From the NCBI GenBank assembly GCA_033442325.1, contig JAWQFM010000026.1, positions 290,249 to 354,248 on the forward strand: 64,000 nt of DNA, written 5' to 3'. The stretch comes from Salpingoeca rosetta. Taxonomy: Eukaryota > Protista > Choanoflagellata. Below, one piece after another: positions 53,093 to 61,067 of the stretch (positions are counted from its first letter, which is position 1; each line of letters opens with the position of its first letter). A program made the position numbers and the translations under genes. Below the pieces are notes generated by a model. It worked only from the letters and a program-made list of their open reading frames with translations. It was not told the origin of the DNA and did not search any database.

Positions 53093-54199
53093 TTATCGCT
53101 GCTGTGCTTGGTGATCGTGAAGTATCTGTTTCACTTGATCGCACGTTGCGCCGACCACGAGGATATCGTCATCCGTGCCACGGGCGGTCCGGGCAGCATC
53201 AAACACTTCACGACGCACTGCACACTTCTCGGAGCACCGCCCCTGCCCTGGATCCCGGAACACCACGTGTTCTTGCTCGCCTGTTGTGGCAGCCAGGCCT
53301 TCAAAGACGATGTAGTGGCCAATGTATGGCTGAGTGTAGTCCGCGGTGGGAAGGCCGCAGTCACGGCAGTCCAGCTGCAGCACATTGACAAGCACGATGA
53401 TGGCCAGTCCGTTAGCTCGCAGTGTGAGCAGCTCTTCCAGTGTCAATCGCGCATCCACCATGGCCGGGGCCTCTGTCTCATACAGTTGTGCTACGCTCTG
53501 CTTCACGACGCCACTTGGACCGCATGTGCTTGCTGCTGTGGCGCACGCTGTGGTTGTCCCTCCTGTTGTGGCCGCTGTTGGAGTGGACATGGAGCCGCAT
53601 GCTGGTGCAGCGAGGTCCAACGCCCACGACATGACATCAACTGTGCCTTCTTGGCCACTGCGTTCCTGTTGTTCCTTGTCTTCGTGGCTCTGGTCGAGGG
53701 GTCGCTCTCGCTGCTGCTGCTCTTGCTGCTCTTGCTGCTCTTGCTGCTGCTCTTGGTGGTGTTGTGGGTGTAGTGGGCGGTCCATTGTGGGTGCTTGTGT
53801 GCTGTTGTTGTAGAAGGGCAGGTCTGCGTACGCGTCTGCGTCCAGGACTGTCGTGGTGGTGCACAGGGTACTCGGTGTATCAAACGCTGTCTTGAGTACA
53901 TACAATAGCTCCACTGTCCACGCATACCCGCTCGTATATGCTTGGAACGCCTCCAAGACGTCATCAAGGATGGCTTCGTGGTTCCCACTCAGACTGAGCT
54001 GCGCAAACCTCAGGTCTTCCACGTTCTCCACCGCGTCTTCCTCCCGTTGTTGCTGCGGTTGTCGCTGCGTGCATGTCCCTCCTTCACCATCTTCGCTGTG
54101 TTTACTGTCTTCACTGGCGTGGGACTGCAAGGCCATGGCCAGGCACGCCAGCCCGCAATCCCACGTGAAGCGCTGCTTGATTGTGGTTGTGGTCATCAT
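53093..54199 (-). CDS. GUCD1: GUCD1-like protein (Guanylate_cyc_2 family, C39-like peptidase fold), single exon
   Basis: IKQRFTWDCGLACLAMAL, AWTVELLYVL, IIVLVNVLQLDC, YIGHYIV, FRDPG and FDAARTARGTDDDILVV in one uninterrupted 368-aa ORF. Confidence 0.88.
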   Translation of the reverse strand: MMTTTTIKQRFTWDCGLACLAMALQSHASEDSKHSEDGEGGTCTQRQPQQQREEDAVENVEDLRFAQLSLSGNHEAILDDVLEAFQAYTSGYAWTVELLYVLKTAFDTPSTLCTTTTVLDADAYADLPFYNNSTQAPTMDRPLHPQHHQEQQQEQQEQQEQQQRERPLDQSHEDKEQQERSGQEGTVDVMSWALDLAAPACGSMSTPTAATTGGTTTACATAASTCGPSGVVKQSVAQLYETEAPAMVDARLTLEELLTLRANGLAIIVLVNVLQLDCRDCGLPTADYTQPYIGHYIVFEGLAATTGEQEHVVFRDPGQGRCSEKCAVRREVFDAARTARGTDDDILVVGATCDQVKQILHDHQAQQR

Positions 54200-57431: not shown

Positions 57432-57704
57432 TCCGTCAGGCACGAAGAATTTATTATTGCACAAGCGCACAAACAACACACACACACGCACACACACAGG
57501 CAAGCATACGGGCCGAGAAATACGATAGACTGACAGGAATACACGCACGTGCAAAGAAAGAGGCAGAAGCGATAGAAGCAGGAAAAGAGTCAAGACAATA
57601 ACCATTAGCAAGGGGAAGAGATGCACAGCCATGTGTATGTGTGAGTGGTGGAGGCAGGTGATGAACATCACCACGATCACCACCAATGTTGGTGCTGTTG
57701 TAAA

Positions 57705-58990
57705 CTAGGATGAGTTGAGCGCGTTTGTGCCTCCATAGTTAATCCATGCCAGCAGCTGCTTGGCAGTCAGCGACAGCACGAGATAGACAATCTCCCCATA
57801 CAAGTAGTCCTTCCACTTGCCAATCTGTGCGTGTGTGTGCGTGTGTGTGTGTGTGTGCGTGTGTGTGTGTGTGTGTGAGCGAGTATGCATATTTGAGAGC
57901 TACCGAAAACGCACAGTCCATTGTGTTGCACTCAACACCACGAACGCACCTCCTTGAGCTGCAGGAACATGTTGATGGCAAAGGTGAGGTCGCAGAAGAA
58001 GAGGATGAAGATGATCGCCCACACAAACCCCGGTGGATCCTGCCATCATCATCATCAAAGCACGAAACAGCCAGAGGCCCGCGGTGAGAACTAGGGTGTT
58101 GTCGACAGCGCGCAAACGGCAGGAAAGCACAGAACAAGCAGTCCAAGAAAGGCAAGAAAGGAAAGAGAAGTACGCCAGCGCACACACTTGCTTGCGCATG
58201 AAAATCCTCCACAGACGCGTGCATGCGCATGTAACCCTTCACGGCTGTACTCTCGCAAACACACACGCATGCAGAGTCACGTACGCCAGTGCTGACGCCC
58301 TGGAAAAAGTATGACGTCACAATTGCCCAAGAAATCACGTGGGGAATGAACCCACACCTGTGGCATCGCAGCAACGCGCAGCATCCGGTGAGACATGAGA
58401 ACGATCGCGAGTCTGGTTACCATGTCCATAACGGTGCATGGACATGCAACACCCAGCGCTGCAGACCTCGGTAGGCTATCAAAACTGAATTACACACAGT
58501 CACAGAGACGCAAGCAAGCACTCAAACATAGACAGACACACACACACATAAACACACGCACATAGACACACACGACACGACACGACACAACACAACACAA
58601 CACAACACAAGACGGCAACGGACCAAAAGGGAACGAGCGTCTTCTTCTCCGGCTGCCCCTGGAGATGGTGTGTTGTGATCTCCTGAGTGAGGCCAAAGAG
58701 CATGGTGGACATGGTCAGGCCGAAGATGGCGATGAGGAGGTGGAGATCCAGCACGCCAGAGAGCTGCGCAATCTGCACCCGCATCACGGACGCAGACAGG
58801 CTGTACTCAATCCACCTGCAGCATGTCACACGTGCACCACGGCAACACAAGTGGAGTTGGACGTGGTGAGCTGTTGTGCAAAATTGAGAGAGGGAGAGAA
58901 GGGGGAGGGAGGGAAGCGTGTGGGGTGGCGTGACACACAGGGCGCGGTGGCATGCCACACGGCGTGACTTTTGGCAACACACACACAACA

Positions 58991-59089
<99 letters not shown>

Positions 59090-59704
59090 CGCATGTGCAA
59101 ACATATAGGCACGCACAGCATGTCATACAAACGCACGCACTCACACAATATACACACACGCCACGGCAACGGCACCTGTACGGGTTCTGAGCGAGCTTGA
59201 GGTAGTCTTCGTATGAGCGACGCAGCACCGTCGCCACAAGCAGGTGATCCAGGGCAGCAAGCAGTAGAAAGATGCCAGAATAATACCTGCACAGCAACAA
59301 GACGGTAAAGACAGCCGCGAGCAAGGCACGCAGCAATGAGAAAATGAGATGACACAACACACTGGCACCCAGCAAACGCGTGTCATCCCCCACATACAAC
59401 GCCAAGCCCAGCATACAACAAACACACACGCACACACACACACACACAAGGGCTCCAGAGCAGCAACAAGGCAGACTTACCCAACGACAGAGCGGCCTTT
59501 GTTGCTGACAACGGGGGCCCATTCCTCAGGGTTGCCACGTTCACTGGCATATGTGGTAAACACAAGCGCATACTAACGTGGAGGCAAACAACGCCACAAC
59601 CAACGTGAGCGCCAAGAACAGGTACACCCAGACATATACGAGCAACAGTCGCAACCGCGACTCCAGTAACATAGGCAGTGGACCACCCACATCGCCCCCC
59701 CCCC

Positions 59705-59777
<73 letters not shown>

Positions 59778-60231
59778 CCAGTTCAGTCGTACGTTGCCTT
59801 GATCTGTGAGAGCAAAGATGATGAAGCTTGTCAGGAGATTGAAGAGGGCAGTCCACATGTTCCACTTGAACAGCGAGGTGCTCCGCTATCATGCACGTGT
59901 GCAGAAGCATCGACAAAAAGCCACCCACCCAACTCATGTGAGCACTGCTTTCAAGGGCACAAATGGTGGGGCTGTGTCGTGTGACATGCTCGGCCAGGGC
60001 AACATCTGGCACCATGATTAGCCAGTCAAGACGCAAGCATGCATGCATTCTGTCACAGAGTGGACACGCCCATTCCCCTCCCCGGAAAACAAGCAAAGCC
60101 AACAACGCATGCCAACACGCATGGAGAGCCTGTACCTCAATGTCGAGGACCACGATGGAGCTGATGGACCGCGGCGAGTGGATGTGGGCCGGTATGCGCT
60201 GCCCGCTGGACATGCTCTCCGTCGTCGACAT
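57705..60231 (-). CDS. HeR: Heliorhodopsin (retinal-binding, inverted-topology rhodopsin), 8 exons, about 288 aa
   Basis: Phase-consistent GT-AG splicing gives LFKWNMWTALFNLL (TM1), a beta-hairpin loop, FLLLAALDHLL (TM2 His), YEDYL...NPYRWIEYSLSAS (TM3), MLFGLTQE (TM4), PFWCG (TM5), PPGFVWAI...TFAINMFLQ (TM6) and GKWKDYLYGEIVYLVLSLTAKQLLAW (TM7 SxxxK; Lys codon 57759-57761). Confidence 0.95.
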
Positions 60232-61067
60232 GGCTGCCTAGGACGTGTGTCGAAGGGTGACGGGTAGCTGCAATGTGGAGAGAGGAGGCGCTCAAGCGTT
60301 AATTTGGTTGCTGGGTGAATGGTGAACAGGCCAGATGGGGAGGAGGGGGGAGGGGCGGTGTTGATGAGAAAATATGACCCTTGTGGCTGGTGTGTGGTTG
60401 CTGTGCTCGTGGTGAATGAGACGACAGAATAACCATGAACAAGTGAACGCAACACTGAATGCAACTGAGTACACTCGAGCAGGCCCAAGCTCACATCATC
60501 ACGTCACCTCAACATAGGGAAGGCAACAAAGCGTGCGCGTGTGTGCGACGGAACCTTCTCGCTCTCGCATCTGCGTGTGCGCGTCGTGAAGTGCAGGCGT
60601 GTTGGGTGATGGCTTGTTTCTTGGCTTCTTTGTTGCTTCATGAACCGCAAGTGTGATGATGTTGCGGAGGGTTGAGTAAAGTTTCCAACAAACTTTCTAC
60701 ATTGCGTCCAAACGAAAAACCGTCAAAGCAACAGTGGGTGAGTGGTTAGTGTGGTGGTAAGAGGAGGTGCTGGCGTTTGGATGGCGGAGGGCAGAGGTGG
60801 CGAAAGAGCGGACATGGATGGATGGACATGGCGTGCGTGAGGAGGTGCAGTGGTGAGGAAGACAAGAAGGCAGCGAAGAGGTGCAAGCAGGGCGATAGCA
60901 GGGAGTGAGATGGCTGTGTTGTTCGCCTTTGATTGATGCATGTGCTGGTGGTTGCCGTTGCTTAACTGTGGTGTTTGTTTGTATTTTGTTGTGGGTGATT
61001 CTTGCACGGACGGCACAGAAACCAGAGGAAGGACAGCTCCCCCTTTGCTTCCACGGGATTTGCCATC

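What the first reader, a model, noticed from the sequence alone, without database searches (positions are those of the whole stretch)
57740..59860. Heliorhodopsin carries non-canonical buried polar/charged residues: a candidate ion-conducting or retuned variant
I aligned by eye to HeR-48C12, recalled from memory. The conserved TM1 His (H23) is Asn (LFNLLT, codon 59838-59840). TM3 has Arg and Gln in normally hydrophobic positions (SVMRVQ, codon 58779-58781). TM6 has Asp in the retinal-pocket stretch (FFCDLTF, 57989-57991). TM2 has Asp next to the His (LDH), TM5 has a His (IPH), and TM7 reads AKQLLAWIN instead of AKSxLAWQ. Inference: a TM3 Arg-TM6 Asp pair could form a salt bridge or polar path through the normally sealed hydrophobic extracellular half. 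A viral HeR with extra carboxylates is known to conduct protons.
Basis: partly seen in the sequence, partly recalled or inferred. Interest (0 to 1): 0.8.

Follow-up and report, generated by a model that had tools for sequence, protein, structure and literature searches.

The report
Choanoflagellate heliorhodopsin, eukaryote-type polar pocket
This is an intact, spliced and expressed light-sensor gene (a heliorhodopsin) of the choanoflagellate Salpingoeca rosetta, and most of its "odd" buried polar residues are the norm for a large, untested eukaryotic/giant-virus branch of the family rather than a peculiarity of this gene.

Summary
The gene is Salpingoeca rosetta PTSG_08586: 288 aa, 8 exons, minus strand, CDS 57705-60231. 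RNA-seq shows it is spliced and expressed. It matches Pfam Heliorhodopsin over its full length (268 bits), and its AlphaFold2 model (pLDDT 92.9) matches the TaHeR and 48C12 structures.

In 121 aligned relatives, Asp236 occurs in 98 (48C12 Phe206, bR Trp182 site). All 98 carry Arg or His at site 143 and an H-bonding residue at site 201 (His in 84). Asp107, Gln272 and Asn278 are also consensus. Only Asn48 (48C12 His23) is unique, and Gln145 (bR Asp96 position) is uncommon.

The polar set therefore marks a eukaryotic/giant-virus "D-type" subfamily. I found no characterised member. It lacks the Phe206/Gly169 lateral fenestration of canonical heliorhodopsins. It also lacks the Glu191/Trp195 hallmarks of the proton-conducting viral V2HeR3.

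On the tree, Asp236 tracks site 201 more closely than Arg143. The tools give no model coordinates, so the Arg-Asp distance was not measured. Most likely this is a slow photosensor; proton transport is not excluded (about 0.2). Orthologues exist in four other choanoflagellates.

The parts
60136..60231 (-). Coding exon 1 (residues 1-32). The ATG at 60231-60229 is preceded by an in-frame TAG at 60240-60238. The 5'UTR continues beyond 60400.
   Evidence: Junction 59885/60136 is seen in 60+56 stranded RNA reads and in 2 transcript contigs. The translation equals P0001.
59793..59885 (-). Exon 2: TM1, including N48 (59838-59840; 48C12 His23 site) and N41.
   Evidence: Transcript contigs X13 and X5; GT-AG splice sites; alignment to 6SU3.
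59481..59572 (-). Exon 3: the extracellular A-B beta-hairpin loop.
   Evidence: RNA contigs place the acceptor at 59572, which corrected my first model. The AF2 model has strands at 64-72 and 83-92.
59176..59286 (-). Exon 4: TM2 with D107-H108 (59244-59249; H108 = 48C12 His80) and the B-C loop helix.
   Evidence: Junctions 59283/59478 and 58812/59173 in RNA reads; Pfam PF18761 hit on this exon alone.
58624..58815 (-). Exon 5: TM3 and TM4. Holds E134, the counterion (58806-58808); R143 (58779-58781); Q145 (58773-58775); and H156 (58740-58742).
   Evidence: Pfam hit E 4.8e-17; PDB alignments; transcript contigs.
58285..58357 (-). Exon 6: TM5 with P200-H201 (H201 at 58339-58341; 48C12 Gly169 / TaHeR Gly171 fenestration site) and W205.
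   Evidence: Junction 58038/58284 in 65+44 reads; alignment.
57950..58039 (-). Exon 7: TM6 with L232 (V2HeR3 Glu191 site) and D236 (57989-57991; 48C12 Phe206 = bR Trp182 site).
   Evidence: Pfam hit; alignment; PMC7049168 and PMC9448325.
57705..57824 (-). Exon 8: TM7 with S267 (57771-57773), the retinal lysine K271 (57759-57761), Q272 and N278, ending in the stop TAG at 57705-57707. The 3'UTR runs to about 57533.
   Evidence: Pfam hit E 4.4e-14. The transcript contig starts at 57533.

Best explanation
The locus is the nuclear gene PTSG_08586 of the choanoflagellate Salpingoeca rosetta. It has 8 exons and is transcribed, and it encodes a 288-aa heliorhodopsin.

Shown: the HeR fold and every Schiff-base essential are present. 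These are the retinal lysine K271, the counterion E134, S267, H108, R131, W132, E176 and E260. The protein belongs to a eukaryotic/giant-virus 'D-type' subfamily. In that subfamily the canonical TM6 Phe (bR Trp182 site) is Asp, the TM5 fenestration Gly is His (less often Tyr, Trp or Gln), TM3 Ile116 is Arg or His, the TM4 extracellular end carries His156, and the TM5 proline moves from site 172 to site 168.

Inferred: D236 is hydrogen-bonded to H201 and charge-balanced by R143. This polar cluster fills the space where canonical HeRs have the hydrophobic plug and the lateral TM5-TM6 opening, so the protein probably does not bind a carotenoid antenna there.

Inferred mechanism: light isomerises retinal, and the Schiff-base proton moves into the conserved cytoplasmic polar cavity. 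That cavity is here lined by N41, N48, D107, H108 and E260. A long-lived intermediate then signals to a partner, as in most tested HeRs. N48 is a lineage-specific His-to-Asn change (the two nearest relatives have His). It resembles the Gln found at this site in half of the subfamily, and probably tunes photocycle kinetics rather than changing function.
For: Identity and expression:
- Pfam PF18761 scores 268 bits over profile positions 1-241 of 242.
- phmmer against 48C12 gives E 1.4e-39.
- The AF2 model has pLDDT 92.9, and Foldseek top hits are TaHeR and 48C12 with target-normalised TM 0.89-0.92.
- Spliced, stranded RNA reads and transcript contigs cover all 7 junctions.
- The exact protein is on record as S. 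rosetta PTSG_08586.

Subfamily consensus:
- The triple R/H143 + H201 + D236 occurs in 84 of 121 sequences; F236 always comes with G201 and an aliphatic 143 (19 of 19).
- Arg and His interchange at site 143 at least 6 times on the tree while D236 stays fixed.
- D236 loss co-occurs with loss of H201 in about 5 of 5 independent pairs.
- Published structures say that Gly169 and Phe206 both line the TM5-TM6 fenestration (10.1101/2025.11.27.691015; PMC13739731).

Vertical history:
- Orthologues exist in Microstomoeca, Diaphanoeca, Choanoeca perplexa and C. flexa.
- The gene has seven GT-AG introns.

Base rate for function:
- 48C12, TaHeR, Cv06, EhHeR, McHeR and V2HeR1/2 show no steady ion transport. 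Only the V2HeR3 group does.
Against: No D-type HeR has been characterised in any paper I could find, so the 'sensor' assignment rests on the family base rate alone.

The extracellular half is not hydrophobic here, and hydrophobicity is the published structural argument for why canonical HeRs do not transport.

D236 sits on the same TM6 face as V2HeR3's essential Glu191, one helical turn nearer the retinal. Q145 occupies the bR Asp96 position. Both are compatible with a proton path.

The contacts D236-H201 and D236-R143 are inferred from covariation and from published descriptions of other HeRs. They were not measured. No signalling partner is known.
Confidence: 0.6

Rival explanations
1. [quoted passage not shown] After isomerisation the Schiff base exchanges a proton with D236 on the extracellular side. 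H201, R143, Q145 and H156 then relay the proton to the extracellular surface.
For: Four to six conserved polar or charged residues lie in the extracellular half that is sealed in non-transporting HeRs. D236 is at i+4 from the site of V2HeR3's essential Glu191, on the same helix face. Q145, which is E in Microstomoeca and several relatives, sits at the bR Asp96 position. Seven D-type members carry both Glu232 and Asp236.
Against: The V2HeR3 hallmarks Glu191 and Trp195 are absent; these sites are L232 and D236 here. Glu191 alone is not sufficient, since EhHeR and McHeR have it without transporting. Site 145 is Met in 54% of D-type sequences, so the outer part of the path is not conserved. A buried Asp-His-Arg cluster is equally typical of a structural ion pair. 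No experiment exists.
Confidence: 0.2
2. The cluster is a spectral-tuning or ion-binding site. One form would be a His/His/Asp metal (Zn2+) site in the His143 majority, with the Arg143 guanidinium standing in for the cation in the S. rosetta lineage. The protein would remain a sensor, but its colour or photocycle would depend on the bound ion or on pH.
For: H143, H201 and D236 form a 2-His-1-carboxylate set in 42 of 121 sequences, and conserved H156 adds a further His. Arg replaces His repeatedly. A carboxylate at the bR Trp182 site lies next to the polyene and should shift absorption (an inference from general rhodopsin colour-tuning principles).
Against: The geometry is unmeasured. The Arg/His interchange also fits a plain H-bond or salt bridge. 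Nothing ties the site to metals.
Confidence: 0.12
3. The gene is not a functional host gene: it is a recent viral insertion, a contaminant or a decaying copy.
For: Some D-type HeRs lie on long, gene-dense, ORFan-rich contigs that look like giant-virus genomes.
Against: The gene has seven spliceosomal GT-AG introns, an intact ORF, steady stranded expression in independent studies, and orthologues in four other choanoflagellate transcriptomes that cluster near it. All invariant HeR residues are retained.
Confidence: 0.03

Closest known systems
Canonical heliorhodopsins 48C12 (PDB 6SU3) and TaHeR (6IS6)
   Same: Same fold: target-normalised TM 0.89-0.92 and 33-38% identity. Same TM7 Lys, TM3 Glu counterion, Ser at the bR Asp212 site, TM2 His, Arg131/Trp132, Glu176, Glu260 and A-B beta-hairpin.
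   Different: His23 is Asn here. The hydrophobic extracellular interior is interrupted by R143, Q145, H156, H201, D236 and N278. Phe206 is Asp, Gly169 is His, Pro172 is Ser with Pro moved to site 168, and Asn138 is Thr.
V2HeR3 group, proton-transporting HeRs of Emiliania huxleyi viruses (PMC9448325)
   Same: It is a HeR with polar and carboxylate residues in the extracellular half of TM6. It belongs to the broad eukaryotic/viral part of the family.
   Different: The hallmark Glu191 site is Leu232, and the Trp195 site is Asp236. The carboxylate is one turn deeper. No transport data exist.
Cv06 of Chromera velia (PDB 9VFC), the only solved eukaryotic HeR (10.1101/2025.11.27.691015)
   Same: Eukaryotic origin and the same HeR Schiff-base network. 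It matches the query at E 8.6e-28.
   Different: Cv06 keeps Phe254/Gly219 (the Phe206/Gly169 sites), the fenestration and a hydrophobic extracellular half, and it shows no transport. The S. rosetta protein has Asp and His at those sites.
Kovalev et al. 2020 'subfamily 2' of HeRs (mostly viral; PMC7049168)
   Same: It lacks Pro172, has Pro at site 168, and has no Asn138 analogue. One member is described with Asn at the His23 site.
   Different: It has no Glu at site 202 and no His at sites 162/166 as described for that group. That paper does not mention Asp at site 206.
Rh-PDE, the type-1 enzyme rhodopsin of S. rosetta
   Same: It is a retinal photoreceptor of the same organism, so a retinal supply exists (PMC6789865).
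   Different: It belongs to an unrelated rhodopsin family, has the opposite topology and is fused to an enzyme domain. The HeR has no fused domain.

Membership tests
Heliorhodopsin (Pfam PF18761) | Full-length profile match above the curated cut-off | tested here: met
   268.1 bits against a cut-off of 26.7, covering profile positions 1-241 of 242. Four single exons each pass the cut-off on their own.
Heliorhodopsin (Pfam PF18761) | Seven-TM HeR fold with a long A-B beta-hairpin | tested here: met
   AF2 pLDDT 92.9, seven helices plus strands at 64-72 and 83-92. The top 10 Foldseek hits are all HeR structures.
Heliorhodopsin (Pfam PF18761) | TM7 retinal Lys, TM3 Glu counterion, and Ser at the bR Asp212 site | tested here: met
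   K271=K241, E134=E107 and S267=S237. All three are invariant or nearly invariant in 77-121 relatives.
Heliorhodopsin (Pfam PF18761) | His pair of the cytoplasmic cavity (48C12 His23 and His80) | tested here: not met
   H108=His80 is present, but His23 is Asn48. This feature is not universal: Gln occupies the site in 51 of 121 relatives. It does not exclude membership.
Heliorhodopsin (Pfam PF18761) | Inverted topology (N-terminus cytoplasmic) | tested here: inconclusive
   K+R count is 9 in the predicted cytoplasmic segments against 3 in the extracellular ones. This fits the positive-inside rule but is not an experiment.
Heliorhodopsin (Pfam PF18761) | Binds all-trans retinal and shows a photocycle | not testable with these tools
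   Needs expression and spectroscopy.
V2HeR3-type proton-transporting HeRs | Glu at the V2HeR3-191 site (48C12 Leu202) | tested here: not met
   The site is Leu232 (site definition from PMC9448325).
V2HeR3-type proton-transporting HeRs | Trp at the V2HeR3-195 site (48C12 Phe206) | tested here: not met
   The site is Asp236.
V2HeR3-type proton-transporting HeRs | Steady-state light-induced proton current | not testable with these tools
   Needs patch clamp or a pH-electrode assay.
Fenestrated / putative carotenoid-binding HeRs (91% of HeRs according to 10.1101/2025.11.27.691015) | Opposing aromatic pair at 48C12 sites 162 and 206, plus Gly169 | tested here: not met
   F194 (site 162) is present, but site 206 is Asp236 and site 169 is His201.
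Eukaryotic/viral 'D-type' HeR subfamily (defined here) | Asp at site 236, Arg or His at 143, an H-bonding residue at 201, His156, Pro200 and Asn278 | tested here: met
   All six are present. Frequencies in the 98 D-type sequences: Asp 98, Arg/His 98, His/Tyr/Trp/Gln 98, His156 93, Pro200 94, Asn278 about 88. The protein groups with the D-type in the tree.

The most novel reading that the evidence does not exclude
The whole D-type subfamily, including the choanoflagellate proteins, is a second and mechanistically distinct class of proton-translocating heliorhodopsins. The carboxylate at the bR-Trp182 site (D236) would exchange protons with the isomerised Schiff base. The conserved His201 / Arg-His143 / His156 chain would connect it to the extracellular medium. 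This would give a heterotrophic relative of animals a light-controlled membrane conductance.
Probability: 0.2. Interest if true: 0.8.

Novelty: new member of a known kind. Interest (0 to 1): 0.45.

Why it matters
The physiological role of heliorhodopsins has been open since their discovery in 2018. Almost all biophysics has been done on bacterial, archaeal or viral proteins.

Here an intact, expressed HeR sits in Salpingoeca rosetta. From my own knowledge, not checked here, this choanoflagellate has transfection and CRISPR editing. Orthologues occur in at least four other choanoflagellates. A knockout or tagging experiment in a eukaryote closely related to animals is therefore feasible.

The comparison also exposes a subfamily-wide feature that I did not find described in the papers searched. 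The Phe206/Gly169 lateral fenestration and the hydrophobic extracellular plug of canonical HeRs are replaced by a conserved Asp-His-Arg/His(-His) cluster. That gives concrete mutants to test whether eukaryotic HeRs differ in colour, photocycle, carotenoid binding or ion transport.

For the finding as written, the lesson is sobering. Comparison with 48C12 alone made ordinary subfamily residues look exceptional.

Tried and rejected
1. My first gene models were wrong at exon 3. One used an acceptor at 59524. Another used a frame reading '..NGPP..', which resembled my memory of 48C12 but could not be spliced in frame. RNA contigs put the acceptor at 59572, and the result equals P0001.

2. I tried to obtain model coordinates to measure the R143-D236 distance. 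Structure prediction returns only pLDDT and secondary structure, and /data holds no model file. The distance is unmeasured.

3. A helical-wheel argument places I116/R143 on the TM4/TM5-facing side of TM3, about 180 degrees from E134. This neither proves nor excludes contact with D236, so I treat it as inconclusive.

4. A scan of IMG/VR viral contigs found only distant HeRs (35% identity or less), all F/Y-type at site 236. However, two D-type proteins lie on giant-virus-like metagenome contigs. 'Eukaryote-only' was therefore rejected.

5. Literature searches for a choanoflagellate or Salpingoeca HeR, or for a characterised D-type HeR, found none. This is absence in an open-access library, not proof.

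6. The correlation between site 48 (His vs Gln/Asn) and site 143 (His vs Arg) is not supported by phylogenetically independent pairs.

7. A search of earlier findings for the word 'rhodopsin' returned nothing.

8. I did not run the large representative search or the third word search, because the conclusions do not rest on absence of relatives.
Full report
**What is there**

The window is eukaryotic: genes are split by introns full of (CA)n and (GTT)n tracts. On the minus strand between 57705 and 60231 lies an eight-exon gene. Four of its exons each match Pfam Heliorhodopsin PF18761 on their own.

Stranded RNA-seq from two 2026 runs, plus transcript contigs from two older runs, support all seven junctions. 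The same data show a 5'UTR reaching beyond 60400 and a 3' end near 57533. CDS depth is about 25-75x in the quarter of each run that was read. The first mates lie on the + strand, which in most stranded libraries means a minus-strand RNA.

All introns are GT-AG. The spliced translation (288 aa) is identical to database protein P0001, 'hypothetical protein PTSG_08586 [Salpingoeca rosetta]'. The window is therefore choanoflagellate DNA. The ATG at 60231 follows an in-frame TAG.

**Is it a heliorhodopsin?**

Yes, on every test available here.
- The full-length Pfam score is 268 bits over the whole profile.
- phmmer finds 48C12 at E 1.4e-39 and TaHeR at 6e-36.
- An AlphaFold2 model built on 77 homologues has pLDDT 92.9, seven helices and the A-B beta-hairpin.
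- Its ten best Foldseek matches are all solved HeRs, with target-normalised TM 0.89-0.92 and rmsd about 2 Å.
- K271, E134, S267, H108, R131, W132, E176 and E260 correspond to 48C12 K241, E107, S237, H80, R104, W105, E149 and E230. All are invariant or nearly so among relatives.
- The loop charge distribution fits an N-in topology.

**Checking the flagged residues**

The mapping to 48C12 is also correct:

| This protein | 48C12 residue | Note |
|---|---|---|
| N48 | H23 | |
| D107 | F79 | |
| R143 | I116 | |
| Q145 | L118 | bR Asp96 position, since M115 = bR L93 |
| H201 | G169 | TaHeR G171 |
| D236 | F206 | bR Trp182 site |
| Q272 | S242 | |
| N278 | I248 | |

**Are they unusual?**

A word search with P0001 found 3343 HeRs at E≤1e-5 and listed the best 120. 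I aligned 121 sequences.

| Residue | Sequences carrying it (of 121) |
|---|---|
| D236 | 98 |
| R143 | 45 (His in 56 more) |
| D107 | 90 |
| H201 | 84 |
| N278 | 92 |
| Q272 | 64 |
| Q145 | 8 |
| N48 | 1 (this protein only; His 61, Gln 51) |

The sequences fall into two types.
- D-type (98 sequences): Asp236, always with Arg or His at 143 (98/98) and an H-bonding residue at 201 (His 84, Tyr 7, Trp 4, Gln 3). His156 is present in 93, Pro200 in 94, and there is no Pro at 204.
- F-type (19 sequences, actinobacterial-like): Phe236, Gly201, an aliphatic 143, Pro204 and Asn165.

Named D-type members come from several eukaryotic groups:
- Choanoflagellates: Microstomoeca roanoka, Diaphanoeca grandis, Choanoeca perplexa and C. 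flexa.
- Algae: green algae (Ulva, Chlamydomonas sp. UWO241), a diatom, Pinguiococcus and the glaucophyte Cyanophora.
- Other protists: the amoebozoan Balamuthia, the rhizarian Lapot and a centrohelid.

Two D-type proteins lie on 66-kb and 264-kb gene-dense, ORFan-rich contigs that look like giant-virus genomes. HeRs recovered from IMG/VR were distant and F/Y-type.

So five of the seven flagged features are the consensus of a eukaryotic/giant-virus subfamily. Only N48 is specific to the S. rosetta lineage. Its two closest relatives, an unnamed Logan contig (P0002) and Microstomoeca (P0003), have His.

**The Arg-Asp idea**

In a maximum-likelihood tree Arg and His interchange at site 143 at least six times while Asp236 stays fixed. 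This argues that a basic, H-bonding side chain is needed there.

Asp236 is lost five independent times: to Glu, Cys, Asn, Tyr, and in the F-type clade.
- Residue 201 changes with it in about five of five cases.
- The basic residue at 143 changes only in the two cases where 236 becomes aromatic.

Published structures state that 48C12 Gly169 and Phe206 (Cv06 G219 and F254) both line the TM5-TM6 lateral fenestration. The TaHeR G171W mutation blocks retinal uptake through that opening. I therefore infer that H201 and D236 are direct neighbours and that the D-type closes this opening.

Whether R143 also touches D236 is plausible: the side-chain exchange is roughly complementary, and the co-occurrence is perfect. 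It is unproven, because I could not obtain model coordinates. By helical periodicity R143 faces the TM4/TM5 side of TM3, about 13 Å toward the extracellular side from the counterion. It could equally reach up towards His156.

**Comparison with known functional classes**

- Canonical HeRs (48C12, TaHeR) and the eukaryotic Cv06 have an entirely hydrophobic extracellular half and do not transport ions.
- The viral V2HeR3 group conducts protons. It depends on Glu191 (48C12 L202 site) together with Trp195 (F206 site). Glu191 is necessary but not sufficient.
- In the S. rosetta protein those sites are Leu232 and Asp236. It fails both V2HeR3 hallmarks, yet it carries a carboxylate one turn deeper on the same TM6 face.
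- It also fails the Phe206/Gly169 signature of the fenestration proposed to bind carotenoids, which is reported for 91% of HeRs.
- It shares three traits with Kovalev's mostly viral 'subfamily 2': no Pro172, Pro at 168, and no Asn138 analogue. It lacks that group's Glu202.

I found no paper in the searchable library that describes a choanoflagellate HeR or characterises a D-type HeR.

**Most likely function**

All tested HeRs outside the V2HeR3 group show no steady-state ion transport. On that base rate, and because the Schiff-base and cytoplasmic-cavity residues are intact, I think a slow photosensor is most likely (about 0.6). In this reading the Asp-His-Arg cluster is a structural or tuning element that replaces the hydrophobic plug and fenestration.

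A proton-transporting role is not excluded (about 0.2). An ion-binding or tuning site is a further possibility (about 0.1). A non-functional or foreign gene is very unlikely given its introns, expression and orthologues.

**Verdict**

The protein is an ordinary member of an uncharacterised eukaryotic/viral HeR subfamily, not a one-off variant. Its interest lies in the organism, a tractable relative of animals, and in the subfamily-wide polar cluster, which gives clear experiments.

The scan had already noted this same stretch as an intact heliorhodopsin in a probable choanoflagellate, which my results confirm.

Noticed in passing
window 53096-54199 (-): A 368-aa ORF about 3.5 kb downstream of the HeR gene, on the same strand, matches Pfam PF09778 Guanylate_cyc_2 (GUCD1-like) at E 1.4e-24. 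It is probably a coincidental neighbour, but a cyclic-nucleotide-related gene next to a photoreceptor is worth a glance.
   Followed up: no
window 60269-60400 (-): RNA reads have loose ends at 60269 and 60312 with a shared consensus (36+14+7 reads). This indicates an alternative 5'UTR splice to an exon upstream of 60400.
   Followed up: no
window 58082-58275: Low but non-zero RNA depth (about 2-10x) lies inside intron 6, and a contig in run X5 spans 58010-58313. This points to some intron retention. A few opposite-strand reads appear in run X22.
   Followed up: no
window 58985-59099 and introns 2, 3, 5, 7: Intron 4 holds an uninterrupted (GTT)n tract of about 115 nt, and several introns hold long (CA/TG)n microsatellites. 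These create spurious long ORFs in six-frame scans.
   Followed up: no
L007 6001-6840; L009 5259-6062: D-type heliorhodopsins also sit on 264-kb and 66-kb metagenome contigs packed with short-spaced ORFan genes, which look like giant-virus genomes. The subfamily is therefore shared between eukaryotes and large DNA viruses.
   Followed up: partly
P0033, P0040, P0085, P0092, P0098, P0101, P0110: Seven D-type HeRs, including both Cyanophora paralogues, carry Glu at the V2HeR3-Glu191 site as well as Asp236. These are the best natural candidates for proton transport within the subfamily.
   Followed up: no
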